Below are positions 1 to 32,570 of a stretch of DNA of 64,000 nt, one piece after another. The DNA is from Macrostomum lignano (Eukaryota). Each line of letters begins with the position of its first letter. The stretch's first letter is position 1. A program made the translations under genes and the position numbers. The notes under the pieces were generated by a model. It ran no database searches and was not told the origin of the DNA. It saw nothing but the letters and a program-made list of their open reading frames with translations. Where the stretch lies: contig NIVC01001374.1 in NCBI GenBank assembly GCA_002269645.1, forward strand, positions 124,001 through 188,000. Reading direction: 5' to 3'.

Positions 1-1545
1 CTCCGTTGCTGCAGCCGTCCGGGAAGAAGTCGCCACCGATGGCCACGTTCAGGATGAGATGGAACGGCTGGTCGAATGGCGCCATCCGGTTGCCGCCGGC
101 CCACAGGTTGTTGCCCTGGAAGTTGCCGAGCTTCCAGAAGCCGCCAGCGTCTGGCCGGATCGCTCCGATGAACACGTCGTCAACCTTGTAGGCGATGTAG
201 CTGTCTGACCACTCCAGCTCGTACTTGTGGAAGGACTCCGTGTAGGGGTTGGAATAGTCGTCCTTTGTCCAGGCGGTCAGATCCCAGCGGTTCTGACCCG
301 GGTGAGGTCCCCAGTGCAAAGTGGATCCCATGTGCTTGTTGCCGATGTGCTTGTTGCCGCAGCTGAAATCGGTGTTGCCGCGAATCTCCACCAGGTCGAT
401 CTCGCCAGACATTGGCCAGCCGCCGTATTTCCAGTCTGTCGGCAGCATCCAGATGGCTGGCCACAGCCAGTCACCCTTGGGCATCTTGGCCGACACCTCC
501 AGACGACCGTAGCGGAAGGAGAAAGACTGGGAGGTGCGCATCCTGGCTGACTGCATTGGATTCAGGATGTCCACGCCAGCGGAGATCATGCAGCCGCCGT
601 CGATGTTCATATCGGGCTGGCAGCCCTGCTCCCAGAGGTTAAGACTGCCTGAAATGTGCGTTTTTTTAAAGCAAGCTCAGTTCCCTTATTTGGTTGTTTA
701 CACGTGTTCGTGGTGCGGCATGTTCTAACCGCCAAGGTCTTCTATAGGTTTTTCTGGTCAAGTAGACTGGTATCATGACCGATACATGACATGATGACCG
801 ATCCGCACCCTTGTGTTTGTTATACCTGTGCAGAAAAGATTTATACATGGAAACGAACGACTCTGCTACTTAAAATGCTCTTGACTTGGTCTTTTGGTTT
901 TGGATGCAGGAGTAGGTTACGCAACGGTCTCAGCACTGTACAAGCTGTATGCTCGTACGCAGGGGCTTGATAGTCTCATACACTTGGCTACCTTGCTGGA
1001 TCAGTGGATTAACCAAAAAGAGAAGCCTTCTCACCTCTATAAAGAAAGTCGTTGCCGTACTCGCTAGCCGTGGACGATGGCTTGATGTAGAGCTTGCCAT
1101 TTCGTACGTAGCTATTCTTGCGACTGTTTCTGTAGTACTGGAACTCGTGGTTACCGCCGCGCCAGCCGGTGACGAGGTGCTGCCAACGGCGCTCGTCTAG
1201 AGTGTTGAAGTCCTCCTGAAAGATGAGCTTCTCGTTGACGGCACAATTGGCCGGGCCGGCGATCCGGTAGCGATTGTTCTCCGGCTTGCTGTTGCCGCTC
1301 TTTAGCCAGCAGGTGAGGCGGCACTGCGGACAGTTCTGGTCAGTTGGCGGCGACCAGGAGAAGAACCTGCAGCCGGGCCTGAGCTGGCAGTGTCGCTGAC
1401 AGGCCTCGGCCGAGGCCACTCCAGTGATGGTGCCGGAGTTCAAGTCGTCGCCGGTGTAGTCAAGTCCGTACTCGAGACAGACCCGATGGCCTTCGGCAGC
1501 TCCGAAGGCGACTAGAGCTAGAATAGCTAGGATGCGAGCTGGCAT
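1..1545 (-). CDS. Secreted PAN/apple domain + GH16 beta-1,3-glucanase (LGBP/laminarinase family); exons 1545-1035 and 648-<1, 3' end outside window
   Basis: Signal peptide MPARILAILALVAFGAAEG, then PAN module CLEYGLDYTGDDL...CWLKS...GPANC, then GH16 (LIFQEDF...WRGGNHEFQYY). The GT-AG intron 1034-649 joins in frame to SARMRTSQSFSFRYGRLEVSAKMPKGDWLWPAIWMLP...WPMSGEIDLVE (intact ExDxxE)...APFDQPFHLILNVAIGG. Confidence 0.93.
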
Positions 1546-1595
1546 GGTTCTGCTGTTGCTGCCGAATACAGCAGTCTGTGCCGGATTGTGGCTTA

Positions 1596-1604
1596 CCTTT
1601 ATAC
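1596..1604 (-). promoter_or_regulatory. Candidate TATA box of the PAN-GH16 gene
   Basis: GTATAAAGG on the minus strand about 55 nt upstream of the ATG at 1545. Confidence 0.5.
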
Positions 1605-2205
1605 CTTTTCTCAGGGTCGGCAGGTGGGGTTGGAGGGCAAAGTTTGAGTAAGACGTTGCTCCAACGCAATCGATAAGCAGGTGGTTCTCGCAGGTTGTTT
1701 TTTCCCAGGTGTCAGGGGGGGGGCGGTTTTTGGTAATAATGTCACGTTGTAAAATAAATACTGCATTGCATTGCATTCATGCCCTGATTTGCCAATCGCC
1801 CAGCTATGGGGCCACTCGGTTCGGTTAGCAAGCACCTGAAGTGAGTACTATGCCATTGCTTAGCGGTGTTTTCCTTTGTTTTGTCCTAGATTAGCTTGGG
1901 AAAATTCTTGTATCGAAGGGGTGTGCTGCAAGGGCAGTCTTATCTGTGCCGTTTGAAATATGGCCTGCTATTGCGTTTTCCAGAAAATATCTTTAAAAAA
2001 TGGGCGTGTATTACTGGGTGTGTATTGCGACTAGGCGTGTACTACTGCACTTTTTCTACAACCTTAACCGAGATTTGTTAACGAAAAAACCCAGAAAATC
2101 TTTGAAGAGAAATCACGCGATCCAGTCTTGTTTGCGAATTTCTGTAAAATTTTAGTGCAGAAGCATCTCATTCGTTTAATCTTAGGTAAAAAGCTCTGCA
2201 ATTAG

Positions 2206-2365
2206 TTGGTTACTACTACTGCTGCTAATACTAATACTACTACTACTACTACTACTATCGCTGCCAGACTAATACTACTACTACTACTACCACAACTACT
2301 AATACTACTGCTAATACTAATACTACTACTACTACTACTACCACAACTACTAATACTACTGCTAA

Positions 2366-2403
<38 letters not shown>

Positions 2404-2456
2404 TCGCTGCCAGACTAATACTACTACTACTGCTACCACTACTACTAATACTACTG

Positions 2457-2495
<39 letters not shown>

Positions 2496-2677
2496 TCGCT
2501 GCCAGACTAATACTACTACTACTACTACTACTACCACTACTACTAATACTACTGCTAATGCTAATACTACTACTACTACTACTATCGCTGCCAGACTAAT
2601 ACTACTACTACTACCACCACTACTACTAATACTACTGCTAATACTACTACTACTACTACTACTACTATCGCTGCCAG

Positions 2678-2709
<32 letters not shown>

Positions 2710-2778
2710 TACCACTACTACTAATACTACTGCTAATGCTAATACTACTAATACTACTACTACTACTATCGCTGCCAG

Positions 2779-2813
<35 letters not shown>

Positions 2814-2834
2814 TACTACTAATACTACTGCTAA

Positions 2835-2922
<88 letters not shown>

Positions 2923-2935
2923 GCTGCTGCTAGTC
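2206..2935. repeat. (CTA)n microsatellite with higher-order spacer
   Basis: CTA/TAC runs interrupted six times by ATCGCTGCCAGACTAATA (about 2257, 2403, 2495, 2584, 2667, 2768). Confidence 0.95.
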
Positions 2936-2968
2936 ATAATGACCTCGAATTTCTCTATCACCCTTCAG

Positions 2969-5019
2969 ATCGGTAATTCGCCGCTGCAAACTTGGCGAAA
3001 GCGACTTCGCACTGGTGGAAGGCGAACGGCTTGTCACTTCTGTGGCCAAACTGAGCCAGTCGCCGCCCAGCTACCTGCTGTCCACCTGTCCCCACCTGCT
3101 CGCCCGTCTGCGCGATCGCTGCCGGGCCGGTCACCGAGGCCAAATCGGCGACTGCGTCCTCGTCACCGACCGCCTGATGTCTCAGCTAGCCGACGCTGCC
3201 ACTCCGCAGGCCTGCCTAGCCGTGTTCCCCAAGCCCGACCCGACCAAGGCTGCCGAGATTCGACAGCGTCGACTCGACGCGGTGACCTCCGGAGGACTTC
3301 GACTCGACTATTCGGTGCTGTGCTGGCGAGTGTCCGATCCGGCTAATGTTGGCGGCATCGCTAGGCTCAGCTGGTGCTTGGGGGCCAGGTGAGACTTGGG
3401 TAGAGTTGGCGCTTTTGTTTTTTAGAATTGGCGATTTTGTGTTTCTTAGAATAGGTCACATTTGTGTTTCTTGGAATAGAAAATAGCACCTTGACTTTAT
3501 CAGACACTGCACCTTTTCTGTATTAGAAATTTCACCTTGCTTTTCTTAAAAAATGCACTTTTTCTTTCTTAGAAATTGCACTGACGCACATCGCGTGCCG
3601 CCTATTTAGCTTAGAAAGTGCATACAAGTGATACAATTCTGCACAATTTCGATTTTTCTAGTTTCTTGATCGCCGGATTGATAAATGCTTTTGTTAGCCT
3701 AACCAGGGTCTTCTGCGATATAAACTTACCATAGAATTTACTCGTAAATACTTTTCAGACCATGTCGGCCGAAATTTGGTAAACTTGCCTTGGCCGCGTC
3801 TTGCCCTAGTCTATGGGCCATAGACTGCAAAAGCCAAACAAAGCAGATGATATAGCATAGAGTTAAGACTCCGTGGGTCGAAGGCTCAAGGGGTTTACGA
3901 AAAATACACCCGCATCTCTATGCTACATCTCTCTTAAATTTCTGCGTTTGTAGCGATAAAAATACAAACCCGCAAATTTATACGTTAAAGATAAGTGCGA
4001 TTTCCGGGGTGTCAGTAGTTTTGCGGGTTATGCTATGAAGTTATGTGAAGGATTTAGAATAGAAATATTAGGGTCGTGGGGCCAGAGCCCCTACAATCTT
4101 CACCATAGGCAATTTTCATCATCAAGGAGATCACTGCTCGATTCATTGATTCCTTGGCTCCTCAACTTAAACACAATATGATTTGATTTGCCTAACTATA
4201 CAACTGCTGGTCCTTAGATCCCTCGGTAGGTTTTTTCGAAAAAATACACTACGGAGCTCGGAAGTTTTCATTTTTCATGGAGAATGATAACAGCATATCA
4301 AAAGATGAACACAGGGTCTGCCTCCTATCGAAAGCAATAACAATTTTTATGCTGAAAGATAAAAACTTCCTATCTCCGTAGTGTATTTTTCGAAAAGACC
4401 TGCCTCCTAAAATATTCTAAGAAACGAGGTTTTTCCGTCTTTCTACTTGAGTAGTCTTTGTATCAAATATTTGTACCAACACGTGGATACAGTTTCGCTA
4501 ACCTGCACACGCCGCAGGCGCCTCCTGATGACCCCGGGCAGCGCCAATCCATGGCTGCCCAAAGCCATCCGCGCCGGCGCTGGCGCCCATTTCGACCTGC
4601 CAATCGTGTCGAACTGCGCAGAGTTCTCCGACGCCTCGCAGCTGTTGTCGGCATTCAGCCGGATTCTGGTCGCGTGCTCGGCCAGACCCAAGGACTCGCT
4701 GTTGCTGACCGGGAGCCGTGAGCTTGCCGATACGCTCCGACAGGATGCCGGCTCGTCCATCTGCCTGTTGCTCGGCTCAGAAGCCAACGGGCTGCCCGAC
4801 GAGCTGATGAAGAGTCTAAATGAGGCTGCACCCGAACGGGTCACAATGCTGCACGTGCCAATGTCCGATTACAGGCAGACTGCCTCGCTGAATGTGGCTG
4901 CCGCTGCTGGCATTGTGCTGCACAGGCTGTATAGTCTGGCTGACGGTGGCGACCTGCTGGACTCTGCTGCTGATGCTGCAGCTGACAGACTGAGCAGTGC
5001 TGGAGGTCGCTATCGCTAG
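2969..5019 (+). CDS. MRM3: SpoU/TrmH-family RNA 2'-O-methyltransferase, MRM3/RNMTL1-like; exons 2969-3388 and 4518-5019, 5' exon not resolved
   Basis: FALVEGERLV; SpoU motif 1 VSDPANVGGIAR; NPWLPKAIRAGAGAHF; LLLGSEANGL; VPM...SLNVAAAAGIVL. The intron 3389-4517 is GT-AG and phase-consistent. Confidence 0.85.
4228..4401. mobile_element. Short palindromic MITE-like repeat in the MRM3 intron; related partial copy at about 20195-20300
   Basis: AGGTTTTTTCGAAAAAATACACTACGGAG ... CTCCGTAGTGTATTTTTCGAAAAGACCT inverted ends. The internal CTGCCTCCTATC(G/A)AAAGCAATAACAATTTTT recurs at about 20210. Confidence 0.6.
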
Positions 5020-5020
5020 C

Positions 5021-5581: not shown

Positions 5582-5930
5582 ATGTAAACATCGCTGAGCA
5601 TTTATGCAACTATGATTAGTTCGCATTTATTTGTTCTGCATCCAATCATGTTACAGTGTTCTCAAATAAATTTGAAAATGCCAGCTGTAGAATTTCTGTT
5701 TCTGTTGATAGCAGGATCTATTATTTTGGTTCAAAAAACTCATATTTTCCAAGACCTTTTTTATTAGTTACTAATAGTAAAAATGCACCAAACTCTCCAG
5801 TTTCTTGAGCAGTGCTTAAACCGTGCTCATGGGGGGAAGGAGCTGCTCAGCAACAAAAACGTCTGACTCTCTCTGACTCCCTTGGTGTGCACAAAAATTG
5901 GCCTGAGGGTTGTCTTGCGATTCACAGACC

Positions 5931-7516
5931 ATGAGACCCAGACCCCCAAGGCCTCTTGCAAATTATGATTATCAATTCCGCTCCCATATTTTGCAGGCGG
6001 AGAATCTCATCAACCTGGAGTTCCTCAGACCAGGCCGGCAGGCTATTCGACTGAAAATTCCCAGTGATCCCCTCAACCAGCTGGGTGCCCGGCTGTGGCC
6101 GAGCTCTCTGAAACTGAGCTGCCTGTTGATGCGGCAGCTGCAGCCTCATCAGGGTGAGCAGCTGGGCACCTGTCTTGAGCTTGGCTGCGGTTGTGGCCTG
6201 GCTGGCGCCATGGCGCTGGCGCTTGGCGCCCGCCGTGTTACATTTACAGACTCGTCACCGAAAGTGCTCAACAGGTGCGCTAAGCAGTGCCGTCTAAATG
6301 GATTCTCAATGAGTGCAGCTTCCAGTAGCTTTGCTGAGCCCGACTTGAAGAGATTCAAGGTAAGGAGCGTTAGAGAAGTTGATTGTTGCTTTCACAAGCT
6401 CGAAATTTCAAGCTGGTGACTGAAATTTAAGTTTAGAGTTTGTGACTCTTCGAGTTTGTGAAGCTTCGAGTTTGTGAAGCTTCGAGTTTGTGAATCTTCG
6501 AGTTCGTGAAGCTTCGAGTTTGTGAAGCTTCGAGTTTGTGAATCTTCGAGTTCGTGAAGCTTCGAGTTTGTGAATCTTCGAGCTCGTGAAGCTTCGAGTT
6601 TGTTAAGCTTCGAGTTTGTTAAGCTTCGAGTTTGTGAATCTTCGAGTTCGTGAAGCTTCGAGTTTGTAAATCTTCGAGTTTGTGAATCTTCGAGTTCTTG
6701 AAGCTTCGAGTTTGTATACTTTCGAGTTTGTAAAACCTTAAAGTTTGTGGATTCTCAAGTTTGTGAATCCTCCAGTTTGTGAATCTTCGAGTTCGTGAAG
6801 CTTCGAGTTCGTGAAGCTTCGTTTTTGTATACTTTCGAGTTTGTAAAACCTTAAAGTTTGTGAATCCTCCAGTTTGTGAGGCTTCGAGTTCGTGAAGTTT
6901 CTTTTTGTATATTTTCGAGTTTGTAAATCGTCAAGTTTGTGAATCCTCGAGTTTGTAAATCCTCTAGTTTGTGAATCCTCTAGTTTGTGAATCCTCTAGT
7001 TTGTGAATCCTCGAGTTTGTGAATCCTCCAGTTTGTGAATCCTCCAGTTTGCTTATATAAAGTCAAACCTACGAGACTCCCCCTTCATTGGAGCGACAGG
7101 CTTCCGTTGGCGAGTTTGACTGTCGCCAGCTCTGCTGGGGCAGCCTCGACCAGCTTCTGCAGGGCCTGGCAGACGGCTGGCTCGCCCAACCGCTGGACCT
7201 GATCCTCGCGTCCGACTGCCTGTACGATCCAGCTGTGTTCGACTCGTTCTTCGCCACTCTGTCCGGTCTGTTCCGACTGGCCAGTCCGGTTCGTCTGGGC
7301 TGTCTGATGTCCGCGCACAACAGGAATCCGGATTGGGGATTTGCGAGACTGCTGGCTCGGTATGGGCTTAGGGCGACGCCGCTGACTCTTGACGATGCAG
7401 ACTCTGTCGAGGCCTGCATCTCTGCGGACTGTTTGGCCTCGCTGCCAGCTGACTTTGCCAGCTGCCTGCTGGAAGATGAAACTGTGCAGCTGTTCAGAGT
7501 GACGCCCGAGCTTTAG
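5931..7516 (+). CDS. METTL23: Methyltransf_16-family protein methyltransferase, METTL23-like, 281 aa; exons 5931-6359 and 7100-7516
   Basis: LGARLWPSSLKLS; SAM motif CLELGCGCGLAG; VTFTD; LCWG; LDLILASDCLYDPAVFDSFFATL. The intron is GTAAGG...GACAG, phase 0. Family is secure, exact orthologue less so. Confidence 0.8.
6446..7050. repeat. 16-bp minisatellite (CTTCGAGTTTGTGAAG) filling the METTL23-like intron
   Basis: Direct tandem array with drifting variants. Confidence 0.93.
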
Positions 7517-8326: not shown

Positions 8327-9479
8327 TACAAATTTATTATCTACATAAAAGGGTCAATCAACAATGTTATAATAATATAACTATGATTACATTCGCGTCA
8401 AATACTAGTGTTGAATAATGACTAAAGGCGGGCACGCTTGTGTATAGTATATAGCATTTCCCGGTCAATAGCGCGGTACATATAGTCAGTTTCTAGATTC
8501 CTACAATCGGGTTCGCAGAAATTTTCTGTCCATCATCAGTCGTGAAAAAAAAGTGCTAACAGTTTCGCAGATTTGTCAGCACTAACGATTTATCATATTT
8601 CGATTTCTCCTCGTCCACTTAAAACCAATTTAGCTTCACATCGTATCAATACAGTGCAGTCAATATCGTGTTCAGCAATCTTGTTCGCACATGTGGAAGT
8701 CATTATCGAGTCTAGCAATCAGTTTATGATGCAATTCATACCTTTAAAACTCAACGACTACTAGTGCTGGCATGCTGTTCTCAAAATTGGGTTGCATTCA
8801 ATGAACTTAGCGCTTTCTGTGATCTATTTAACTCGCACCTCAAAATCGCTGTGTTACTTCATCTATAGTCACCCAGCTGCTTTATTTTGCACCGAAAATT
8901 TACTCCTGAGATTCAATATGGCTGAGCAAGTCCGTAGAAACTGAACGACAAATACTGATCGGCAATGACTGGTTGATGCCTTTGAAGCTGGCGACGACCA
9001 AAACCAGAATAAGCGCGCAGTTAACTTTCCACAGACCGGAATAAGCGCGCAGTATTTTTGATCGATACAGGAAAAAGCGCGCACGAGTTTTCCCATGACT
9101 TGGAACAAGCGCGCCAAAATTTTACCCGCTTTCGGAATGAGCGCGCAGCTGCTTTTGTACTGACGGGATTAAGCGCGCAAATGATGATTTTAACCGACTG
9201 ACTGCAGGGGCCTGAAATTTTCAAAGGGCATGGGCCTTTAGGCTCAATATCTGACTGACTGACCACAGTTGGCTCTCTCGGCTTCTGATTGGCTGCAGGG
9301 GAGAGGGGTGCAATGTACAGTGCCCAGCGCATGGAGCGTGCAAATCAGGTTGTGGGCCTGATATGACTTACACTTTCAATTGCGGCGTTTAAAAGCCGAT
9401 TACACTGCGATCAAATTATTCAGTGTTACTTCTAGCTATGGAGTGCATAGAAGACTGCGCGCTGAAACACGTTTCTACA

Positions 9480-10070: not shown

Positions 10071-10074
10071 CCAG

Positions 10075-11418: not shown

Positions 11419-13973
11419 ATGTTAAATGGAGATGAAAATGTAATTTCAAAACTATTTCAATGTAGTATATGTCTTCATACACACAAGGATTTATTTAAGC
11501 TTATAATTCATATAAAACTATACCATTCTTTTGGGAATAGCAATTTTTTATGTCCAGTTAGGGGATGTTACCATATTAGTGTTACAATTGAAGGATTACA
11601 AGCACATGCCTATCGTATGCACAAAAACAGTGTTGTTGATAATTTTTCCCAAGACCAAGTTCTACAGCCAAATTGTGTTCATAATAACCCTACTCTAGAC
11701 TTATTAGGAAACCCTTTAGAAAATGAATTGCAAGCTGTGCCTATAGATATAGCCATATTATCTACTATTTGTAACCAAGTTGAAAATGAAAAAAAAGACC
11801 CTGAATTTGAAATGTCTAGTGATTTTTTATGTGAAAATACAAGAAAACATCTTGCTGAAAATTTTGTTTACTTTTATCTAAAGTCTAGACATTTCTTTTT
11901 AATTCCTAAAAGCAAATCTAATCAATTATGTGAACTTGTTAAGGAAATAGTATTGAAGTTTGCTGATGACTATTTTTTGTTATTTGAGCAATTTTTAAAA
12001 GAAGAATGTCCTTCAATAGTTAACAGCTATAATTCTTATAAAAATAAATTAAATTTGCAAGAAATGATTGACCTTTCATTAGAGCATCTATTAAGTAATA
12101 AAAAAATATTTGAAATTTTACAAAACAAGTTTAATTTTGTTGAGCCCATTGAAATCATAGATGAAGAATCAAAATTAAAAATTCTATATATTCCAATAAA
12201 AGAAACACTTAGTTCTATTATAAAAAATGAGACATTGCTTAAGTATATTATTACAAATTCTTATTTAAATGCAACCAACAAAGAAAATTTTTTTTTAAGT
12301 CTACTTATTTTGAAGAACATATTAGTCCATTGTTAACAAATAAGAATGGTATATTCATAAAACTTTATTCAGATGAAATTGAAATATGTAATCCTATTGG
12401 GTCTGCCAAAACAAAACATAAATTATGTGTAGTATACTTTACTATTCTTAATTTCCCTGAATATCTTAGTTCATCTTCAGACTTATATTTTCTTTTAACA
12501 GTATTTAATGATTCAAATGTTAAAAAGAAAGGTTTACAGTTTTGTTTATTTCCATTAATTAGAGAGCTGAATGAGCTTTACTTTGAAGAATTTCAAATAA
12601 GTAATTTGATAAAAATGCCTGTTATTGCTGCTTTCATGACTGGGGATAATTTATCAATACATAGAATGTTAGGTATGCAAACTTGGTTTTCAAGTGGTTA
12701 TATTTGTAGATTTTGTTTTATAGGTTATAAACAGCTTTGTAGCATTAGATTAGAAGAATTAAGTACATTATTCCTATTTGAATATCGAGATAATTCATCA
12801 TATATTGAAGATTTTAAATCCTTAAGTAATGGTTTAATTTCACCATCTGTGTTTAGAAGTGTAGCATATATTAACTTTCAATATTTTTTCCCCCCTGATA
12901 TAATGCATGATGTGTTTGAAGGGTTTTCTCATGTTGTTATATGTATTATTCTATTAAGTATTATTCAAAATCATAATATTAGTATAGACTATATAAACAA
13001 ACAACTAAATTTGATTAAAGAAGTCAGTATTCCTACAATAAATAAATATCACTTACAAAATTATCATCTACCATGTACTTCTAATCAAATAATTGTTATT
13101 CTACAATACTTTGGACTTTTATTTGGACATTTGTTTGAGTTGGATGATGATATTTGGATATTATTTAATTGTCACAGGCAGTTTCTTGACATAATTTTGT
13201 CCCCATATGATAGTAGCATAAACTTAGAATATTTTCAATCTCTTATTTCTGGCCAATTAGAATTAATATATAGAAACACGGGCTTCAATCCTAAATATAA
13301 ATGTAAATTGCATTATATATGTCACTATCCTGAATTTTATCATTATTATAGTGGTCTTAAATACTTATGGTGTATGCGAGGTGAAGCTCATCATCAATTG
13401 CTTAAGAATATAAACAGGCATGCAAGAAATTTCAAAAATCCTGCCTATACATGTGCAAAACAATATCAAATTCGAAAGGCACTTATCATTAAGCACTATG
13501 AACCAGGCACAATTAAGAGCCATAATATAAATCCTATTAGCTTAAATATGCTATTGACAATAGATGAACAAACTGAGTTATGCAACAACATGAATTTAGA
13601 TACAGACTCAATTATTGGCACTATTTGTCTTTCTACTAATGAACTAAAATATCAGGGGTTTGTATATCGGACTCCAACATTAAATTACCGTTATTGTTTG
13701 CCAATTTTAGAACCAACTGGAATTGCTTTAGCATTAATTAGCCATATTATTCAACTTTCCAACAAGTGGATAATTATTTGTAAAAAAGTGAATGCTAAAT
13801 TTTCTTGTCATTATAGCAGTTTTATATGCACTGTGAATAATGACCATTTAGTATTTATTGAACCTACTCAGCACTTTTTTCATCAGCCAATTCCATTTTT
13901 AATGTATCAAGGGAAACTTTTTCTTTCTTTAAAATATTATCCAATGCTACATTGCCAAAACATTGATCAATAA
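11419..13973 (+). CDS. EnSpm/CACTA transposase with N-terminal C2H2-like zinc fingers; split by a -1 frameshift at the T9 run 12288-12296
   Basis: CSIC...H..H and CPVRGC...H...H; LYSDEIEICNPIGS (D1); MTGDNL (D2); CRFC; FPPDIMHDVFEG; WCMRGEAHHQ (E). One extra T joins ORF 11419-12336 to ORF 12330-13973. Confidence 0.88.
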
Positions 13974-14334
13974 TCTACAATCTTAGTGGGTATCATTTTA
14001 GATAAATTTAAGCATATAACAATATGGCATACACTTGCACTTCATAAAATAACAAATTATTACAAGGGCCACCTTGCCTCTAGCACAAGGAACTGTGCTC
14101 TCCACCTTACATAGATTTCTGGCCTATAGGTGTCTAACCTTTTTATGATAGGTCGGCTTGCCCTTCCTTGACTAGGCTAGTTCTATGTAGATGGTGCAGG
14201 TTTTCGAACCATTTCTTGCCTAAAATGGGTTCATCCTCTGTCTAAGCTTGTTGAAGCTTCAGCTTTTAGTATTGAAGAGTGAAGATTGTTCAGAAAAAAG
14301 CAACAAAAAAACAAAAACATCATAAAAACACTAA

Positions 14335-14821
14335 ACATTTTGTTGTCACAGTCATTACTTATGGCTGCAAGGTATGGGGTCCACTGGCCAGGCAATCAAA
14401 AATTAAGGATCTGGATAATATTCAATTGAAATTCTATAAGTCTCTCCTTAAATTCTTAATCTACCAGAGCATACATACAAGCAATAAAGTCATACTCAAT
14501 GAACTCAACATTCTTCCTATTTCTGAAATCATTAAGAAAAGGTACCTCCTTTTCTGGTTAAAACTTATTTAAAGCTAACTCTACTACCACTAGTCTCTTT
14601 AACAACAATGACAATCCAATTGATCCTTGGAAGAAAGCCATCTCACAGCAACTTAAAGGCATTGATCTAATGCAAAAACTTCTACTGTTTAAATTGTATT
14701 GTCCATTATTGACAACTTTTGTTAACACTAAGTTATTCATATCTAATTAAATACACTCTATTAACATAACGGGCACTACTTGCCCAAGCCAATTAACTAC
14801 TACTACTACTACTACTACTAC
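14335..14821 (+). mobile_element. 5'-truncated non-LTR retrotransposon (LINE) 3' fragment with (CTA)n tail
   Basis: ITYGCKVWG...LDNIQLKFYKSLL...SNKVILNELNILPISEIIKKRYLLFWLKL is typical of LINE ORF2 just after the RT domain. The fragment ends in CTA repeats at 14797-14821. Confidence 0.7.
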
Positions 14822-14952
14822 ATTAAGTCAAGCCAAGGACAAAAGCCGAAAAATCATAATGAACAAGAATTCCTTGGCTTTATAAATTCATTTTATCTGT
14901 GTCTTACCAGATGTATTCTGATTGAGGTTGTGCACATCATACCTCATTTCAG

Positions 14953-16671
14953 CTTCGAATCTGCAACGGCTCAGAGGAGCGCAAGAAGCTCCTTCCAGCT
15001 TCTGGCCTGACCTTGGCGGACCTTCGCATCAAAGGTTGTTTAAAATTGGACATTGCAGATGTTGAAAATGTTCGCATTGTCACTTCTGACGGTTTCGAAA
15101 TCGACGACGATGATTTAATATCGGAGGTGGCAAAGGAATGTAGAACTGTGTACTTCCTTCTTTCTGGAGAGTTGCTTCCAAGCTGCGGTGCATGCCCTGT
15201 AGAACCTTCAACTACACCAAAGCAGCAAAGCGAAATACGCAATGTCGAGATTGCCACAACACCGAGTCGAGGCACACAGGCTCTGAGTCCAAATCCAGCT
15301 GTAGCAGCTACGGCTGCAACTACACTTCCATGGCCCGAAGTGTACTCGCTTCCACGAATGGACGATCTCGCCAACGCCCTTCGTGATCTACGAATGCACC
15401 CCGAAAAGGGTTCCGATTTAAAAATGAACGCGACGTTTGTCAACAAGTTCCTTAAATTCATCGTCGATCACATCTGTTTGAACTATCTGTCGCCAAATGA
15501 ACCATACCTGTCATCTAGCCAGATAACAGATGTGTGCACTTCCATAGTAACTTCGTATCCTGGACTGAAGGACACCTCATTAAGTGGGAGCTCAAGCTTT
15601 TGGCGCCAAAAGCTTATTCGGCGTTTCAAAGAGCTCCGGTTCGTTGGCGACTTTGTCGACAAGAGCAGCCCAACGGTTCAGGAGATGCGACGGAAGCATG
15701 GTCGACTTGGTCATCGGCGTATAATTCTACCAAATGCTGCTGCAGCTGCTGCAGGCCCAAGTGCGGTTACTGTGAGCCAAAGGCATAAACGGCAGTACAA
15801 GGAAGTTGAAGGCCAGGAAGATGATGACGACAATGAAATTATAGCTTCACGTGCTAAAAGAGCCAACAAGCAGCGTATCAACGACGACGAAGATCTGATC
15901 GAAGAAGAAGGCGATGATGATAGTGATGCAGACGATGCTGGCAGTGCAATGGCGAAGAGCGTTGACTTCGGCGAGTTCGATACCGATGTACCACCGTCAC
16001 ACGAAGCTCGTCGAACGAGATTGAACGAGACTCATCATGACTCTTCAATATCAGACGTTCTCAACGAAATGCAGGCTCTGTTTCCGATTCGAATATTGCG
16101 GTGCCAAGATTTGACGGTTAGTGACGAAATTGCCTTATATGCGCCACTGGTAAACATCGAAGTACTGCAGCAGGAGGCGTATCTCATGATCCAGACATAC
16201 AACAGAAGCAAAACTGACTATGTACTTCCACCAAGTCCATCGGAAATGAGAAGCAGGATTATTAACGCCTTGTTGCTTGTGTACAGTAAAAGGCAGTTGC
16301 TAAAAAATTTCAAGCTGTGCAAGGATTATGTGGAATTGCCAGTTGTTTCAGAGGAGGACAAGCTGCCTGTGGCTGTCTTTCTTCTTCTCGGTCGGTTGCG
16401 AGTCGACCCGTCTATTATTCTTCGCGACGCACTGCCAGTCAGAATTCTGACAGAGGATGGAAAATGGTGCGGCGTTTTCGTCAACGGTGCGAGCATCCCA
16501 TTCGACAGTGTTACTGACTCGATAATTGCATTTGTAATTGTCTTCATCGCGTTCAACCTCCAGCACCTCCCTGCCCTAGAGGCGTTTCTGGAGGTAATCG
16601 AAGTGCTGTCGGGCCTTCGCAAGAAAGCCGTCCGCAAGGCTGCAGTAGCTATTTTGGATGCACTTCGTTAG
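14953..16671 (+). CDS. CACTA ORF2 accessory protein with N-terminal CIDE-N/PB1-like fold; 5' exon unresolved
   Basis: Open frame from acceptor CATTTCAG|CTT: LRICNGSEERKKLLPASGLTLADLRIKGCLKLDI...IVTSDGFEIDDDDLI. An acidic central tract and a C-terminal ...AFIVFNLQHLP...FLE segment follow, as in animal EnSpm second ORFs. Confidence 0.7.
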   Translation, partial: LRICNGSEERKKLLPASGLTLADLRIKGCLKLDIADVENVRIVTSDGFEIDDDDLISEVAKECRTVYFLLSGELLPSCGACPVEPSTTPKQQSEIRNVEIATTPSRGTQALSPNPAVAATAATTLPWPEVYSLPRMDDLANALRDLRMHPEKGSDLKMNATFVNKFLKFIVDHICLNYLSPNEPYLSSSQITDVCTSIVTSYPGLKDTSLSGSSSFWRQKLIRRFKELRFVGDFVDKSSPTVQEMRRKHGRLGHRRIILPNAAAAAAGPSAVTVSQRHKRQYKEVEGQEDDDDNEIIASRAKRANKQRINDDEDLIEEEGDDDSDADDAGSAMAKSVDFGEFDTDVPPSHEARRTRLNETHHDSSISDVLNEMQALFPIRILRCQDLTVSDEIALYAPLVNIEVLQQEAYLMIQTYNRSKTDYVLPPSPSEMRSRIINALLLVYSKRQLLKNFKLCKDYVELPVVSEEDKLPVAVFLLLGRLRVDPSIILRDALPVRILTEDGKWCGVFVNGASIPFDSVTDSIIAFVIVFIAFNLQHLPALEAFLEVIEVLSGLRKKAVRKAAVAILDALR

Positions 16672-17689
16672 ATGATTTTATAACGCCTAGACATGACTAT
16701 TGTAATCATTTTCATTTTTATAATAATTATATTCATTTTCATGTTAGTACGATTGAATATGACTGTGAATTAATCGTAATCACAAGCCTAATCACAATCA
16801 CAATATTTATTTTCATATTCACAATCATAATCATAGAGTGTTATCTGTCATCAGAGGGTCACGGCGATGTTGGCTGCTTATTTATTGCCCTGTGTATTTA
16901 GTTTGTGCTTTTTAGTCTGTATATTCAACTTCACTCTTTGAGTGACCAAAGCAAACACTTATTCGCAATGTGTAATGTGCAACAAATAATTACTAAATAT
17001 TATTATTACCACTGTTTTTGTACTACAACAATAAATATTTTAGGATCAATCTTTATATACCATAAAAAATACTTTAAATTGGTTAACATCCTTCATAAAC
17101 ATGCAATTGTTGATTACGAATGCTTCACTTCTTACTTTTCTTAAATTGAGCAATGACTGACAACATTGTATGCCTCACATAATGTAATTGGGAACAATTT
17201 TACAGGTAAGGAAATTCATAAAATTCATACCTATAATAGTGGGTATTTTGTGTCTTGCAGATCAAGTGAATACATTTTGGGGTGTAATCGTTTTTATATT
17301 TCGGACCCATAATGCGGACATCTGAAAAATATGGACTTTGCAATAGGGACCTTTCAAAATACGGACCTTTCAAAATACGGACCTTGCAATACGGACTTTA
17401 CAATACGGACCCATCAAAATACGGACCTTTCATGGTCCGTTATTTCGACGCTCCGGACCCTCCACAATGGACCTTTCCCGGACCCTTCTTCGGACCTTTA
17501 GGAATTACAGTGCTGTATCGAGGAATATCGATGCGCACTTATTCCAACATTTTCCGTGCGCGCTTTTGCGAAGTGTGCAAAAAAATACACGTGCGCGCTT
17601 ATTCCTGGTACGCTTAATCAGCCCTCCCCATCCTAACACATCAAGAATTCCACTGCGAGATCGATCATCGCTACCTGGGTTCGAGAAGT

Positions 17690-18689: not shown

Positions 18690-18697
18690 TATAAATA
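18690..18697 (+). promoter_or_regulatory. TATA box of triple-PAN gene 1
   Basis: TATAAATA about 65 nt upstream of ATG 18756. A poly(A) signal AATAAA lies at 19679. Confidence 0.6.
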
Positions 18698-18755
18698 CGG
18701 CCTTCAAATTGCCCTTCAAGCCAATAACTCCTTAACTCAATCAAGCCTACTCAAG

Positions 18756-19595
18756 ATGAACAACAGCTCAACTCAAAGCAAGCGTCGGTCGTTGAGGTTT
18801 CTCCTACCGAAATCGGTAGCAGTGCTCTTGGCCGCTCTGTCCCTGCTCAGCCCATTCGCTTCGGCCTCTTCCTGCAGGGCCGCTGATGTCGAGTTCAAAG
18901 GCGAGGAGTTGCCTTTCGGAAGACTGATGGCTGGCAGTGCTGCGGAGTGCCAGCTCAAATGCCGGTCAATCAGCCGCTGCAAGTTCTACACTTTTACACC
19001 TGACAAAGAGCGGTCGAGTTGGAGTTTGTGCTCGATCAGGTCCGGCGACTACACGGCTACTTACAAGAAGAATTCGATCTCGGGACTACCGAATTGTCCT
19101 GGCACCTGCATTGAGGCTGGCGTGGACTACTACGGCTCTGACCTGCCGGACGGTCTCGTGAAGGACGTGCCCAGTTCTGACGTCTGCCAGAAGCTGTGCC
19201 AGCAGCGGAGCGACTGCGAATTCTTTGCTTACGCCACACAAAGCGACTCGAACTGCCGGCGCTGCTACCGCAACTGCTGGCTGAAGTCTGGCGGCTACAG
19301 CCGCACTGAGAACAGAAACCGGATCTCTGGACCAGCCCGCTGCAAGGACTGCGTTGAGACTGGCGTGGACTACTATGGCTCTGACTTGCCCGACGGTCTC
19401 GTGAAGGACATCGCCAGCGCCAAGGACTGCCAGTCGCTGTGCGCCAATCGCAAGGACTGCGAGTTCTTCGCCTGGGCTCCCGACAATGACAAGGGGTGCC
19501 AAACCTGCAGGGGCAACTGCTGGCTGAAGTCTGGCAACTACCGACGGGTCGTCAATTCCAACAGAGTCTCCGGGCCCGCCGTTTGCAACTTTTGA
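18756..19595 (+). CDS. Secreted intronless triple PAN/apple-domain protein (279 aa), copy 1
   Basis: Hydrophobic signal (AVLLAALSLLSPFASA), then three modules of the form C..G.DY/F.G.(D/E)L...C...C.....C.FF......C.(L/I)(K/R)S......SG...C. Confidence 0.88.
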   Translation: MNNSSTQSKRRSLRFLLPKSVAVLLAALSLLSPFASASSCRAADVEFKGEELPFGRLMAGSAAECQLKCRSISRCKFYTFTPDKERSSWSLCSIRSGDYTATYKKNSISGLPNCPGTCIEAGVDYYGSDLPDGLVKDVPSSDVCQKLCQQRSDCEFFAYATQSDSNCRRCYRNCWLKSGGYSRTENRNRISGPARCKDCVETGVDYYGSDLPDGLVKDIASAKDCQSLCANRKDCEFFAWAPDNDKGCQTCRGNCWLKSGNYRRVVNSNRVSGPAVCNF

Positions 19596-21003: not shown

Positions 21004-21610
21004 GGTAGGCATGAGCATCTGGTGGGATGAGAATCTGGTGGGATGAGCATTTGGTGGACATGAGCATCCGGTGCGTGGACATGAGCATCCGTTGGACATG
21101 AGCATCCGGTGGACATGAGTATCTGGTGGACATGAGCATCCGTTGGACATGAGCATCCGGTGCGTGGACATGAGCATCCGTTGGACATGAGCATCCGGTG
21201 CGTGGACATGAGCATCCGTTGGACATGAGCATCCGGTGGACATGAGTATCTGGTGGACATGAGCATCCGGTGGACATGAGTATCTGGTGGACATGAGCAT
21301 CCGGTGGACATGAGTATCTGGTGGACATGAGCATCCGGTGGACATGAGTATCTGGTGGACATGAGCATCCGGTGGACATGAGCATCCGGTGGACATGAGC
21401 ATCTGGTGGACATGAGCATCCGGTGGACATGAGCATCTGGTGGACATGAGCATCCGGTGGACATGAGCATCCGGTGGGCATGAGCATCTGGTGGGATGAA
21501 CATCCGGTGGACATGAGCATCCGGTGGACATGAGCATCCGGTGGGCATGAGCATCCGGTGGGCATGAGCATCTGGTGGACATGAGCATCCGGTGGGATGA
21601 GCATCCGATG
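21004..21610. repeat. 17-bp minisatellite (CCGGTGGACATGAGCAT)
   Basis: Tandem array between the two PAN genes. Confidence 0.95.
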
Positions 21611-22068
21611 AGCCAGCATCAAATTCACGACCTTCTTCATCAGGTATGACGTTAAGCAAACACGCTGACTTCTCACCCATAAATAACCAGGTGGATATAA
21701 AAGTTGCTCAATGACTATACACCACATGACGCGTGGCCCTAAAACATATATTAGCTACGAGTATACTAGAGAATAGGCGAGGAGCTAGCTTATTCCCAGA
21801 CAGCGCTTTCAAAATGAGCCAACGTACATATGCATTCCTACGGGCTTAAGCAGCCTTTTCACGTAGATTTACTCCAGGTGCAAGAGAAAATGAAAGTTAT
21901 CATCACACGCAGCTTGAGGCAGCTAGCAATAACAATAATTAATTGGCTGTTTAGGCTGGTCATTTTCTGACCAATCAGCGCTCAGCAAGGCAGGTTGCTC
22001 TAACTATGTAATAAATTATATAATTCAATGCACGCTGCTTGTACGTGTAACTATATGCCGAGTGGCAC

Positions 22069-22076
22069 TATAAATA
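22069..22076 (+). promoter_or_regulatory. TATA box of triple-PAN gene 2
   Basis: TATAAATA about 65 nt upstream of ATG 22134. Confidence 0.6.
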
Positions 22077-22133
22077 CAGAGCTGGAAATATTCAAACAGC
22101 TTGCAAGATCACCCAGTTAAAGATAGTCAAAAT

Positions 22134-22951
22134 ATGAACTCATTTTTGAGAAGCGGAGCGTCCGTGCGGTCTGCACTACTACTATTAGTAGTTGCACTGG
22201 CAGCTCCACTGGCCGCTTCTGCCTCTTCCTGCAGGGCCGCTGATGTCGAGTTCAAAGGCGAGGAGTTGCCTTTCGGAAGACTGATGGCTGGCAGTGCTGC
22301 GGAGTGCCAGCTCAAATGCCGGTCAATCAGCCGCTGCAAGTTCTACACTTTTACACCTGACAAAGAGCGGTCGAGTTGGAGTTTGTGCTCGATCAGGTCC
22401 GGCGACTACACGGCTACTTACAAGAAGAATTCGATCTCGGGACTACCGAATTGTCCTGGCACCTGCATTGAGGCTGGCGTGGACTACTACGGCTCTGACC
22501 TGCCGGACGGTCTCGTGAAGGACGTGCCCAGTTCTGACGTCTGCCAGAAGCTGTGCCAGCAGCGGATCGACTGCGAATTCTTTGCTTACGCCACACAAAG
22601 CGACTCGAACTGCCGGCGCTGCTACCGCAACTGCTGGCTGAAGTCTGGCGGCTACAGCCGCACTGAGAACAGAAACCGGATCTCTGGACCAGCCGCTGCA
22701 AGGACTGCGTTGAGACTGGCGTGGACTACTATGGCTCTGACTTGCCCGACGGTCTCGTGAAGGACATCGCCAGCGCCAAGGACTGCCAGTCGCTGTGCGC
22801 CAATCGCAAGGACTGCCAGTTCTTCGCCTGGGCTCCCGACAATGACAAGGGGTGCCAAACCTGCAGGGGCAACTGCTGGCTGAAGTCTGGCAACTACCGA
22901 CGGGTCGTCAATTCCAACAGAGTCTCCGGTCCTGCCGTTTGCAACTTTTGA
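22134..22951 (+). CDS. Secreted triple PAN/apple-domain protein, copy 2; 1-nt frameshift near 22694 (pseudogene or sequencing error)
   Basis: A different signal peptide (MNSFLRSGASVRSALLLLVVALAAPLAASA) precedes a mature region almost identical to copy 1. GCCCGCT in copy 1 reads GCCGCT here. Confidence 0.82.
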
Positions 22952-31785: not shown

Positions 31786-31816
<31 letters not shown>

Positions 31817-32373: not shown

Positions 32374-32422
<49 letters not shown>

Positions 32423-32437
32423 TTCTGTCTGTCTGTG

Positions 32438-32482
<45 letters not shown>

Positions 32483-32529
32483 TTCTGTCTGTCTGTCTTT
32501 CTGTCTGTCTGTCTTTCTGTCTGTCTGTG

Positions 32530-32570
<41 letters not shown>

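What the first reader, a model, noticed from the sequence alone, without database searches (positions are those of the whole stretch)
1..22951. Glycan-recognition cluster: PAN-GH16 glucanase plus free secreted triple-PAN proteins built from the same module
Seen: the PAN module fused to a catalytically intact GH16 (EIDLVE) aligns closely with modules 2-3 of two enzyme-less secreted tri-PAN proteins 17-21 kb away (DYxGxDL...CQxxC...CxFF...CWLKSG...NR.RI.GPA.C). All three genes have signal peptides and candidate TATA boxes, unlike the neighbouring housekeeping genes. Known: invertebrate GH16/LGBP proteins bind or hydrolyse beta-1,3-glucan, and PAN/apple modules act as lectins in oomycete CBEL and apicomplexan microneme proteins. 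Inference: an enzyme-plus-multivalent-lectin system for digestion, mucus or immunity against algal or fungal glucans.
Basis: partly seen in the sequence, partly recalled or inferred. Interest (0 to 1): 0.72.

Follow-up and report, generated by a model that had tools for sequence, protein, structure and literature searches.

The report
Flatworm PAN-glucanase with tri-PAN neighbour genes
In the diatom-eating flatworm Macrostomum lignano, a secreted beta-1,3-glucan-cutting enzyme carries an unusual eight-cysteine PAN/apple module that recurs in two neighbouring, unannotated genes made only of three PAN modules; the shared origin is real, but a joint sugar-binding role is untested.

Summary
The sequence observation holds. 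The window is Macrostomum lignano (Mlig_3_7 contig NIVC01001374.1).

- **GH16 gene.** On the minus strand at 1545..1 sits a two-exon gene, cut by the window edge. It encodes signal peptide + one PAN module + a GH16 domain with an intact EIDLVE motif. Its model matches solved laminarinases.
- **Tri-PAN genes.** At 18756-19595 and 22134-22951 (+) are tandem genes for signal peptide + three PAN modules. They are absent from the protein collections searched and not called at homologous locus L003.
- **Copy 2.** As assembled it has a one-base frameshift and no canonical poly(A) signal nearby.
- **Shared module.** The GH16 module is 47-48% identical, without gaps, to modules 2-3. All three share a CxxCxxxCWLK (8-Cys) signature absent from 167 related modules taken from the best 150 hits of a 1.84-billion-protein library.
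- **Promoters.** All three genes have a TATA box 58-66 nt upstream of the ATG.
- **Spacing.** The 17-21 kb gap is inflated by an 8.6-kb transposon-rich block absent from two other copies of the locus.

Best reading: a probably digestive laminarinase with a PAN module where relatives carry CBM39, plus locally duplicated PAN-only secreted proteins. The "enzyme plus lectin system" is plausible, with fungal WSC precedents, but no binding or expression evidence exists. Modest interest.

The parts
1..1545 (-). PAN-GH16 gene: signal peptide, one PAN module, GH16 catalytic domain. Two exons in the window; the 3' end (about 50 codons) lies beyond the window start.
   Evidence: The full protein is cluster P0001, and the 436-aa form starts at MPARIL. 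Gene called at L005 10001-11787.
1598..1603 (-). TATAAA box, 58 nt upstream of the GH16 ATG. It sits in the roughly 260-bp divergent region shared with the SpoU methyltransferase gene.
1489..1545 (-). Signal peptide MPARILAILALVAFGAAEG (by inspection)
   Evidence: no predictor available
1243..1482 (-). GH16-linked PAN module: 80 aa, 8 Cys, contains CPQCRLTCWLKSG
   Evidence: Pfam PAN_4 1.8e-10; alignment
649..1034 (-). Intron (GT..AG, phase 1) inside the GH16 domain. There is no intron between the PAN and GH16 coding parts.
   Evidence: The spliced product matches P0001 at 100%.
386..403 (-). Catalytic motif EIDLVE (ExDxxE)
   Evidence: E253/D255/E258 are invariant in A4 and align to SGEIDIME of 7wwc.
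18690..18697 (+). TATAAATA box of tri-PAN copy 1 (-66), inside a 29-nt palindrome at 18670-18698
18756..19595 (+). Tri-PAN copy 1: intact intronless ORF of 279 aa. Signal peptide 18756-18866. The mature protein is 242 aa, 26.8 kDa, pI 8.3, with 22 Cys.
   Evidence: It is also intact in L003 and L004. A poly(A) signal lies 80-113 nt after the stop.
18870..19097 (+). Copy 1 module 1: canonical 6-Cys PAN, divergent (24-32% identity to the other modules)
19104..19343 (+). Copy 1 module 2: 8-Cys PAN with CRRCYRNCWLKSG
19347..19586 (+). Copy 1 module 3: 8-Cys PAN with CQTCRGNCWLKSG
22069..22076 (+). TATAAATA box of tri-PAN copy 2 (-65)
22134..22951 (+). Tri-PAN copy 2: own promoter and signal peptide. 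The mature coding part is 99.2% identical to copy 1 but is interrupted by a frameshift as assembled.
22692..22694 (+). Frameshift site of copy 2: the C-run is one base shorter than in copy 1. This is either a pseudogene lesion or a residual long-read homopolymer error.
   Evidence: The assembly is PacBio/Canu plus Pilon (PMC5730564).
18857..19606 (+). 750-bp tract 99.2% identical to 22214-22962. It covers exactly the mature coding region, while the flanks are only weakly alignable, so this is a gene-conversion tract between old tandem duplicates.
1805..5019 (+). Intervening, unrelated gene: SpoU-type RNA methyltransferase (318 aa model)
5910..7516 (+). Intervening, unrelated gene: Methyltransf_16 lysine methyltransferase (at least two exons)
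8997..17628 (.). About 8.6 kb present only in this copy of the locus. It holds a 42-bp minisatellite (9945-10958), a 27%-GC two-ORF element (11419-13973) and an ORF at 15013-16671. It inflates the GH16-to-tri-PAN distance.

Best explanation
**What it is (shown).** Three linked genes of Macrostomum lignano share one lineage-specific PAN/apple module type.
- One gene encodes a secreted GH16 endo-beta-1,3-glucanase with its catalytic residues intact. A single 8-Cys PAN module sits at the N-terminus, where many metazoan relatives carry CBM39 or nothing.
- Two tandem genes encode secreted proteins of three PAN modules: one canonical 6-Cys module and two 8-Cys modules. Copy 1 is intact in all three copies of the locus. 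Copy 2 is frameshifted in this assembly.

**How it arose (inferred).** The 8-Cys module spread by local duplication. This was an old event (dS above 1) and the modules have since been kept under moderate purifying selection. The two tri-PAN genes are old tandem duplicates whose mature-coding parts were recently homogenised by gene conversion.

**How it works (inferred, untested).** The enzyme is a gut laminarinase that degrades chrysolaminarin from the diatom diet. Its PAN module acts as a targeting or binding module, holding the enzyme on a glycan-rich surface such as diatom material, glucan, or the worm's own mucus or glycocalyx. The PAN-only proteins are soluble multivalent binders of the same class of ligand.
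For: **Organism and locus**
- P0295 lies on GCA_002269645.1, which papers name as M. lignano Mlig_3_7.
- L005 is 100% identical to window 1-11635.

**Enzyme**
- Pfam GH16 hit and PDB laminarinase hits at 1e-22.
- ExDxxE is invariant.
- The AF2 model has pLDDT above 95 over the GH16 part, and its top 30 Foldseek PDB hits are almost all laminarinases or endo-beta-1,3(4)-glucanases.
- There is no CBM39 hit, whereas relatives P0057, P0068, P0069, P0084 and P0106 have PF15886.

**PAN modules**
- PAN_4/PAN_1 hits.
- FXI and kallikrein apple domains at 1e-12, and TgMIC4 at 7.7e-5.

**Shared origin**
- The three modules are reciprocal best hits at 88-89 bits and 47-48% identity. The best external module scores 70 bits at 42% identity.
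- CxxCxxxCWLK is found in 0 of 167 external modules.

**Selection and gene integrity**
- dN/dS is 0.38-0.49 between modules.
- The copy 1 ORF is intact in L003 and L004.
- TATA boxes and a poly(A) signal are present.

**Gene conversion**
- A 750-bp tract is 99.2% identical, while the flanks are homologous only at z = 4.3 and 7.5.

**Diet and precedent**
- The worm is cultured on the diatom Nitzschia (PMC5730564).
- Catalytically intact insect GH16s are digestive enzymes (abstract of PMC6403176).
- PAN/apple-fold WSC domains occur on a Trichoderma beta-1,3-exoglucanase and form the beta-glucan lectin SiWSC3 (PMC9024836).
Against: - There are no expression data of any kind. Exact-sequence look-ups of both tri-PAN products found no transcript contig. 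The tri-PAN genes are absent from the protein collections searched, and no gene is called over tri-PAN in locus L003.
- There is no evidence of carbohydrate binding. PAN/apple modules bind proteins at least as often as glycans.
- The PAN part could not be modelled: pLDDT 42-56, and 45 for tri-PAN alone.
- Copy 2 may be a pseudogene.
- Two unrelated housekeeping genes lie between the GH16 and tri-PAN genes, which are on opposite strands.
- Linkage was seen only within one neopolyploid genome.
- Between the locus copies, tri-PAN copy 1 differs at five non-synonymous sites and one synonymous site. The numbers are small, but this is not a sign of strong constraint.
Confidence: 0.5

Rival explanations
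1. Paralogy without partnership. The shared module only records local duplication and domain capture. The PAN modules mediate protein-protein contacts (anchoring to mucus or matrix, oligomerisation, protection from gut proteases). The tri-PAN proteins would then work in an unrelated tissue or process, such as epidermal or gland secretions, eggshell or reproduction.
For: - The closest solved relatives by sequence are the protein-binding apple domains of factor XI and kallikrein.
- The same PAN type is attached to unrelated partners elsewhere: a phosphoesterase/nuclease in P0127, a discoidin domain in P0265, and many PAN-only proteins.
- The genes are on opposite strands, with two unrelated genes between them.
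- The module divergence is old, with dS above 1.
Against: - The PAN module occupies the N-terminal position where metazoan relatives carry the glucan-binding CBM39.
- PAN+GH16 recurs in at least two other, unidentified eukaryote lineages (P0004, P0042). This hints at a recurrent functional fit between the two domains.
Confidence: 0.28
2. Immune recognition system. The GH16 protein and the tri-PAN proteins would be pattern-recognition or opsonising factors against fungal or algal beta-glucans, like the arthropod LGBP/betaGRP proteins.
For: - Database names of the closest homologues are 'beta-1,3-glucan-binding protein-like'.
- Secreted multivalent binders are typical of invertebrate humoral immunity (general knowledge).
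Against: - The defining features of betaGRP/GNBP-type receptors are absent. There is no CBM39, and the catalytic E/D/E residues are retained rather than lost.
- The diatom diet offers a simpler explanation.
Confidence: 0.1
3. The tri-PAN reading frames are not functional genes. They would be decaying or never-expressed duplicates of a PAN-encoding segment.
For: - They are absent from the protein collections searched, and no gene is called over tri-PAN in locus L003.
- Copy 2 is frameshifted and lacks a canonical poly(A) signal.
- No transcript contig was found by exact look-up.
Against: - Copy 1 is an intact 279-aa ORF in three separate copies of the locus.
- All 22 cysteines are kept.
- dN/dS between modules is about 0.4.
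- A TATA box, a signal peptide and a poly(A) signal sit at canonical distances.
- Exact-sequence look-ups are fragile in a genome with three near-identical copies of the locus, so the negative transcript result is weak.
Confidence: 0.08

Closest known systems
Metazoan GH16 endo-beta-1,3-glucanases (laminarinases), usually annotated 'beta-1,3-glucan-binding protein-like', e.g. in Daphnia, Artemia and insects; the digestive Aedes GH16 is described in PMC6403176
   Same: - 56-57% identity to the Daphnia and Artemia proteins over the catalytic domain.
- ExDxxE motif and WPAIWMLP cleft motif.
- Secreted.
- Beta-jelly-roll model that matches solved laminarinases.
   Different: - It carries an N-terminal 8-Cys PAN module. 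Most relatives have no extra domain or have CBM39 (PF15886).
- Among the best 120 homologue clusters, only P0001, P0004 and P0042 combine PAN with GH16.
Arthropod LGBP / betaGRP / GNBP pattern-recognition proteins
   Same: Homologous GH16-like domain, and the same database naming.
   Different: Those proteins have CBM39 and have lost their catalytic residues. This protein has no CBM39 and keeps E/D/E.
Fungal WSC-domain proteins: Trichoderma harzianum beta-1,3-exoglucanase ThCrd2 and the Serendipita indica beta-glucan lectin SiWSC3 (as cited in PMC9024836)
   Same: The logic is the same. A cysteine-rich module with a PAN/apple fold is appended to a beta-1,3-glucanase, and it also occurs as an enzyme-free multi-module secreted protein. 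In the fungal case that protein binds beta-glucan.
   Different: - It is a different Pfam family: WSC is PF01822, and no WSC hit was found here.
- The extra disulfides differ and the kingdom differs.
- Binding has been shown for the fungal proteins but not here.
Apicomplexan multi-apple proteins (TgMIC4, Toxoplasma and Cystoisospora 'PAN domain-containing proteins') and oomycete CBEL
   Same: - Tandem PAN/apple modules in secreted proteins.
- By summed score, the coccidian PAN proteins are the best named hits to the module profile.
- MIC4 is hit at 7.7e-5.
   Different: - Identity per module is only about 35-40%.
- None has the CxxC insertion.
- CBEL is defined by CBM1, which is absent here.
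- The biology is different: parasite adhesins and oocyst proteins.
Vertebrate factor XI / plasma prekallikrein apple domains
   Same: They are the best solved-structure relatives by sequence (E about 1e-12), with the six-Cys core pattern.
   Different: Those are four apple modules fused to a serine protease and they bind proteins. No protease domain is present here.

Membership tests
Glycoside hydrolase family 16 (laminarinase type) | Significant match to the GH16 profile | tested here: met
   PF00722 at 45.7 bits against a cut-off of 22. PDB laminarinases at 1e-22 to 1e-18.
Glycoside hydrolase family 16 (laminarinase type) | Catalytic ExDxxE motif (nucleophile, Asp, acid/base) | tested here: met
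   EIDLVE at 403-386. E253, D255 and E258 are invariant in 49 aligned homologues.
Glycoside hydrolase family 16 (laminarinase type) | Beta-jelly-roll fold | tested here: met
   AF2 pLDDT above 95 over residues about 103-436. Foldseek TM-score (target-normalised) about 0.8 to laminarinases, E about 1e-20.
Glycoside hydrolase family 16 (laminarinase type) | Hydrolysis of beta-1,3-glucan | not testable with these tools
   Needs an enzyme assay
CAZy subfamily of metazoan GH16 enzymes | Placement by the CAZy subfamily models | not tested
   No CAZy or dbCAN library was available. The nearest neighbours are metazoan GH16s.
PAN/apple domain superfamily | Significant match to the PAN profiles | tested here: met
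   PAN_4 at 41 bits (GH16 protein) and 83.8 bits with 3 stretches (tri-PAN). PAN_1 at 28 and 56 bits. All are above the cut-offs.
PAN/apple domain superfamily | Six-cysteine core pattern | tested here: met
   C2, C28, C32, C38, C58 and C80 are invariant in all five aligned modules. Disulfide connectivity itself is not testable.
PAN/apple domain superfamily | Apple fold (helix packed on a five-stranded sheet) | tested here: inconclusive
   Models are of low confidence over the PAN parts: pLDDT 45 and 42-56.
LGBP / betaGRP / GNBP pattern-recognition proteins | N-terminal CBM39 glucan-binding domain | tested here: not met
   No PF15886 hit. The domain is present in relatives such as P0057 and P0068.
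LGBP / betaGRP / GNBP pattern-recognition proteins | Loss of the catalytic residues in the GH16-like domain | tested here: not met
   The residues are retained.
WSC domain (PF01822) | Match to the WSC profile | tested here: not met
   No WSC hit at E <= 0.01.
Oomycete CBEL | CBM1 cellulose-binding modules paired with PAN | tested here: not met
   No CBM1 hit.
Lectin (carbohydrate-binding protein) | Demonstrated or residue-level predicted glycan binding | not testable with these tools
   No usable model of the PAN modules and no binding data.
Functional gene cluster (co-regulated system) | Co-expression, or linkage conserved across species | not testable with these tools
   Linkage was seen in three copies of the locus within one recently polyploid genome, which is not independent evidence. 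No expression data could be reached.

The most novel reading that the evidence does not exclude
The 8-Cys PAN variant (with its extra CxxC pair before CWLK) would be a flatworm-specific beta-1,3-glucan-binding or diatom-binding module, in effect a new animal carbohydrate-binding module family. It would serve both as the substrate-targeting domain of the laminarinase and, in trivalent enzyme-free form, as a secreted agglutinin that captures diatom material or chrysolaminarin in the gut. That would be a convergent counterpart of the fungal WSC exoglucanase and WSC3 lectin pair.
Probability: 0.18. Interest if true: 0.55.

Novelty: new variant of a known kind. Interest (0 to 1): 0.3.

Why it matters
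- **Possible new binding module.** If the PAN module proves to bind beta-glucan, it would add an animal carbohydrate-binding module type. It would also show PAN substituting for CBM39 on metazoan laminarinases.
- **Digestion in a lab model.** It would give a handle on how a meiofaunal grazer digests diatom storage glucan, in an organism with transgenesis and RNAi.
- **Annotation gap.** Short, intronless, cysteine-rich secreted genes are missing from the gene calls over this locus and from the protein collections searched.
- **Concerted evolution.** The locus is a clean small example of gene conversion confined to a mature-coding region.
- **If there is no binding.** Without binding, it is an ordinary case of local duplication and domain shuffling.

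Tried and rejected
- **Homologue search with tri-PAN.** The search for homologous proteins on the whole tri-PAN protein found nothing, not even the protein itself. The genes are therefore not in that collection, and the word-index search is too insensitive for this domain.
- **Transcript look-ups.** Exact-sequence look-ups of tri-PAN copy 1 and of the truncated copy 2 product found nothing. This is uninformative, because the genome holds three near-identical copies of the locus.
- **Tri-PAN structure.** The single-sequence AlphaFold2 model had pLDDT 45 and was unusable, so it was not sent to the fold search. The PAN part of the PAN-GH16 model was also of low confidence.
- **Organism from UBE2S.** The search gave only 65-68% identities, with flatworms near the top, and was not decisive. 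The organism was settled through the contig record instead.
- **Early guesses at the organism.** A crustacean origin (the GH16 domain is nearest to Daphnia and Artemia) and a tardigrade origin were both considered and then rejected on the contig identity.
- **Literature.** Searches for PAN+GH16, and for Macrostomum with PAN or glucan, found nothing relevant.
- **Single origin of PAN-GH16.** This is not supported. In a neighbour-joining tree of the GH16 domain, the PAN-bearing P0004 is nested among PAN-less sequences and P0042 is distant. Their PAN modules also differ in number and subtype. The tree is weak, with 66% support for the sister group.
- **Ends of the 8.6-kb block.** A search for terminal inverted repeats found none that were convincing.
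- **Exon shuffling.** This is rejected as the simple mechanism, because PAN and the first part of GH16 share one exon.

Full report
**1. What is in the sequence**

The region is eukaryotic, at about 45% G+C, with microsatellites and minisatellites.

The GH16 gene lies on the minus strand.
- It starts at ATG 1545-1543.
- Exon 1 runs to 1035, a GT..AG intron spans 1034-649, and exon 2 runs from 648 off the window start.
- The spliced product is 100% identical to database cluster P0001, whose 436-aa member begins at MPARIL.
- Pfam finds PAN_4 (1.8e-10), PAN_1 and Glyco_hydro_16 (6.5e-12).
- EIDLVE lies at 403-386.

Two tri-PAN genes lie on the plus strand.
- Copy 1 (18756-19595) is an intact intronless ORF of 279 aa with three PAN stretches (PAN_4 at 8.6e-24).
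- Its mature form is 242 aa, 26.8 kDa, pI 8.3, with 22 cysteines.
- Copy 2 (22134-22951) has its own promoter and signal peptide.
- As assembled, copy 2 has a C-run one base shorter at 22692-22694, which shifts the frame between modules 2 and 3.
- Copy 2 has no AATAAA or ATTAAA within 400 nt of its stop, whereas copy 1 has one 80-113 nt downstream.

**2. The observation tested**

A tblastn search of the four module types against the whole window finds only these seven modules.
- The GH16-linked module matches module 3 at 48% identity and module 2 at 46-47%, over 79-80 residues without a gap (E about 1e-23).
- Modules 2 and 3 are 64% identical to each other.
- Module 1 is a divergent six-Cys PAN, 24-32% identical to the others.
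- The three similar modules have eight cysteines. The extra pair lies in a CxxCxxxCWLKSG motif.

I built a profile of the three modules and searched 1.84 billion representative proteins.
- It gave 1441 hits at E <= 1e-3.
- From the best 150 hits I extracted 167 near-full-length modules.
- The best external match to the GH16-linked module scores 70 bits at 42% identity with gaps. The tri-PAN modules score 88-89 bits. The relationship is reciprocal.
- None of the 167 external modules, and no fetched protein, has CxxCxxxC[WYFH]LK.
- A single-module protein closer than the tri-PAN modules would have scored above the listing cut-off of about 63 bits, so it would have been seen.

The clustering claim therefore stands.

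TATAAA lies 58, 66 and 65 nt upstream of the three ATGs.
- Both tri-PAN boxes read TATAAATA.
- The background is 0.5 TATAAA per kb per strand, and only eight TATAAA[TG]A sites occur on both strands of the window.
- The SpoU neighbour has none in 150 nt.

Signal peptides were judged by eye only.

**3. Organism and locus history**

- A 466-aa member of the P0001 cluster lies on GCA_002269645.1. Papers identify this assembly as Macrostomum lignano Mlig_3_7.
- Locus L005 (contig NIVC01001374.1) is 100% identical to window 1-11635, so the window comes from that contig.
- Two further contigs of the same neopolyploid assembly (L003, L004) carry the same locus at 90-99% identity.
- In both, tri-PAN copy 1 is an intact 279-aa ORF.
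- Both lack window positions about 8997-17628, a block that holds:
  - a 42-bp minisatellite;
  - a 27%-GC element with two ORFs and no Pfam match;
  - a 552-aa ORF.
- Without that block, tri-PAN lies about 8 kb from the GH16 gene. Only a SpoU methyltransferase gene and a Methyltransf_16 lysine methyltransferase gene separate them.
- The gene calls listed for L003 include none over tri-PAN. A search of 5.8 billion proteins with tri-PAN found nothing. These genes are therefore unannotated in the collections I could reach.

**4. Evolution of the parts**

- The two tri-PAN copies share a 750-bp tract at 99.2% identity (18857-19606 and 22214-22962). It begins in the last codons of the signal peptide and ends 11 nt after the stop.
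- Outside the tract, the 5' segment from the TATA box to the tract (z = 4.3) and the 3' flank (local z = 7.5) are only weakly alignable. Further upstream nothing aligns.
- This is the pattern of old tandem duplicates with a recent gene conversion over the mature coding region.
- Variants S->I and E->Q are shared between window copy 2 and copy 1 of L003 and L004, which fits such exchange.
- Between modules, dN/dS is 0.42 (module 2 against 3, dS 0.76) and 0.38-0.49 (GH16 module against modules 2 and 3, dS above 1). The modules are old and have been kept as coding sequence.
- PAN and the first third of the GH16 domain lie in one exon, so simple exon shuffling does not explain the fusion.

**5. 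What the enzyme is**

- The catalytic E, D and E are invariant in an alignment of 49 homologues.
- The AlphaFold2 model has pLDDT above 95 over the GH16 part.
- Its best 30 matches among solved structures are almost all laminarinases or endo-beta-1,3(4)-glucanases, with E about 1e-20 and target-normalised TM-score about 0.8.
- The closest named relatives are branchiopod and insect 'beta-1,3-glucan-binding protein-like' proteins, at 50-57% identity.
- Several metazoan relatives carry CBM39 at the N-terminus (PF15886 in P0057, P0068, P0069, P0084, P0106 and P0110). Here a PAN module occupies that place.
- Among the best 120 homologue clusters, only two others combine PAN with GH16:
  - P0004, with two PAN modules, from a JGI metatranscriptome contig;
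  - P0042, with two PAN modules, from a Logan contig.
- In a neighbour-joining tree of the GH16 domain, the flatworm enzyme is sister to an unnamed metatranscriptome clade, with 66% support.
  - P0004 is nested in that clade among PAN-less sequences, and P0042 is distant.
  - With the different module numbers and subtypes, this suggests repeated acquisition, though only weakly.

**6. What the PAN modules are**

- By sequence they are apple/PAN domains. Factor XI and kallikrein apple domains match at about 1e-12, and Toxoplasma MIC4 at 7.7e-5.
- The best named hits to the module profile are coccidian multi-PAN proteins.
- Unnamed environmental eukaryote proteins carry the same PAN type in different contexts:
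  - alone, in two to five copies;
  - with a discoidin domain (P0265);
  - between a metallophosphoesterase and an endonuclease/exonuclease/phosphatase (EEP-family) domain (P0127).
- It is thus a generic extracellular binding module, and PAN-only secreted proteins are a common kind.
- Structure prediction of the PAN parts failed, so no binding site could be examined.

**7. Most likely mechanism**

- M. lignano is cultured on the diatom Nitzschia curvilineata (PMC5730564).
- Diatoms store chrysolaminarin, a beta-1,3-glucan (established knowledge).
- Catalytically intact insect GH16 enzymes are digestive (abstract of PMC6403176).
- I therefore read the enzyme as a secreted digestive laminarinase.
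- That the PAN module targets it to a glycan-rich substrate, and that the tri-PAN proteins are multivalent binders of the same ligand class, is inference only.
- The best precedent is fungal. WSC domains, which have a PAN/apple fold, occur on a Trichoderma beta-1,3-exoglucanase and make up the beta-glucan lectin SiWSC3 (PMC9024836). The modules here are not WSC members.

The rivals are:
- paralogy without partnership, with PAN as a protein-binding module;
- an immune role, disfavoured because CBM39 is absent and the catalytic residues are kept;
- non-functional tri-PAN ORFs, disfavoured by intactness in three copies of the locus, the conserved cysteines, dN/dS below 1 and the promoter and poly(A) signals.

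**8. Novelty and verdict**

- No paper in the held library describes a PAN-GH16 fusion or PAN proteins of Macrostomum.
- The architecture is already visible in database domain annotations, and both domains are well known.
- New here are the 8-Cys module variant, its sharing between an enzyme and unannotated PAN-only neighbours, and the gene-conversion pattern.
- This is a new variant of known kinds and of modest interest. The 'glycan-recognition system' remains a reasonable but untested hypothesis.

Noticed in passing
window 1-11635 = L005 (NIVC01001374.1, reversed): The window is 100% identical to a contig of the Macrostomum lignano Mlig_3_7 assembly. Two other contigs (L003, L004) hold the same locus at 90-99% identity, as expected for this neopolyploid genome.
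   Followed up: yes
window 18756-19595 and 22134-22951: The tri-PAN genes are absent from the 5.8-billion-protein and 1.84-billion-representative collections. The gene calls listed for L003 include none over tri-PAN, so they look like unannotated genes.
   Followed up: partly
window 8997-17628: A block of about 8.6 kb is absent from the other two copies of the locus. It contains a perfect 42-bp minisatellite (9945-10958), a 27%-GC element with ORFs of 305 and 547 aa and no Pfam match (11419-13973), an ORF fragment at 9551-10024, and a 552-aa ORF (15013-16671, faint CIDE-N). No terminal repeats were found. L003 and L004 resemble each other, so an insertion here and a deletion there are equally parsimonious.
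   Followed up: partly
window 18857-19606 vs 22214-22962: A gene-conversion tract covers exactly the mature coding region of the two tri-PAN copies (99.2% identity). The promoters, signal peptides and 3' UTRs have diverged to near-random similarity.
   Followed up: yes
window 1545-1805: The GH16 gene and the SpoU methyltransferase gene are transcribed divergently, with their ATGs about 260 bp apart. Only the GH16 side has a TATA box.
   Followed up: partly
L003 1230-2069 (-) vs window 18756-19595: Between copies of the locus, tri-PAN copy 1 differs at six sites, five of them non-synonymous (A->V, S->I, V->I, E->Q, A->T). The numbers are small, but the ratio is high for a gene under constraint.
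   Followed up: partly
window 18670-18698: A 29-nt near-perfect palindrome contains the TATA box of tri-PAN copy 1. It is preceded by four GTGCAAC(T) repeats at 18629-18668.
   Followed up: no
window 20184-20288 / 4290-4392 and 18331-18413 / 8448-8530: Short interspersed repeats (about 100 nt, 89-95% identical) flank the genes. They may be miniature transposable elements.
   Followed up: no
window 20806-21727, 24661-25688, 26303-26941, 31700-33000, 33170-34040, 40557-41896: Long minisatellite and microsatellite arrays that read as spurious ORFs in several frames, for example (CTGT)n-like runs giving 'CLSVCLSV'.
   Followed up: no
window 27638-28147; 34400-36616 (-); 50654-51349 (-); 56227-56724 (-); 60230-60703: Other genes in the window, by Pfam: a cyclic-nucleotide-binding protein, dynactin p150-like exons, a class I Glu/Gln tRNA synthetase exon, a UBE2S-like E2 enzyme, and a mariner-type transposase fragment.
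   Followed up: partly
window 56227-56724 (-): The UBE2S-like exon had no match closer than 68% identity among 5.8 billion proteins. Even a Macrostomum lignano entry reached only 68%, so this copy also seems to be missing from public protein sets.
   Followed up: no
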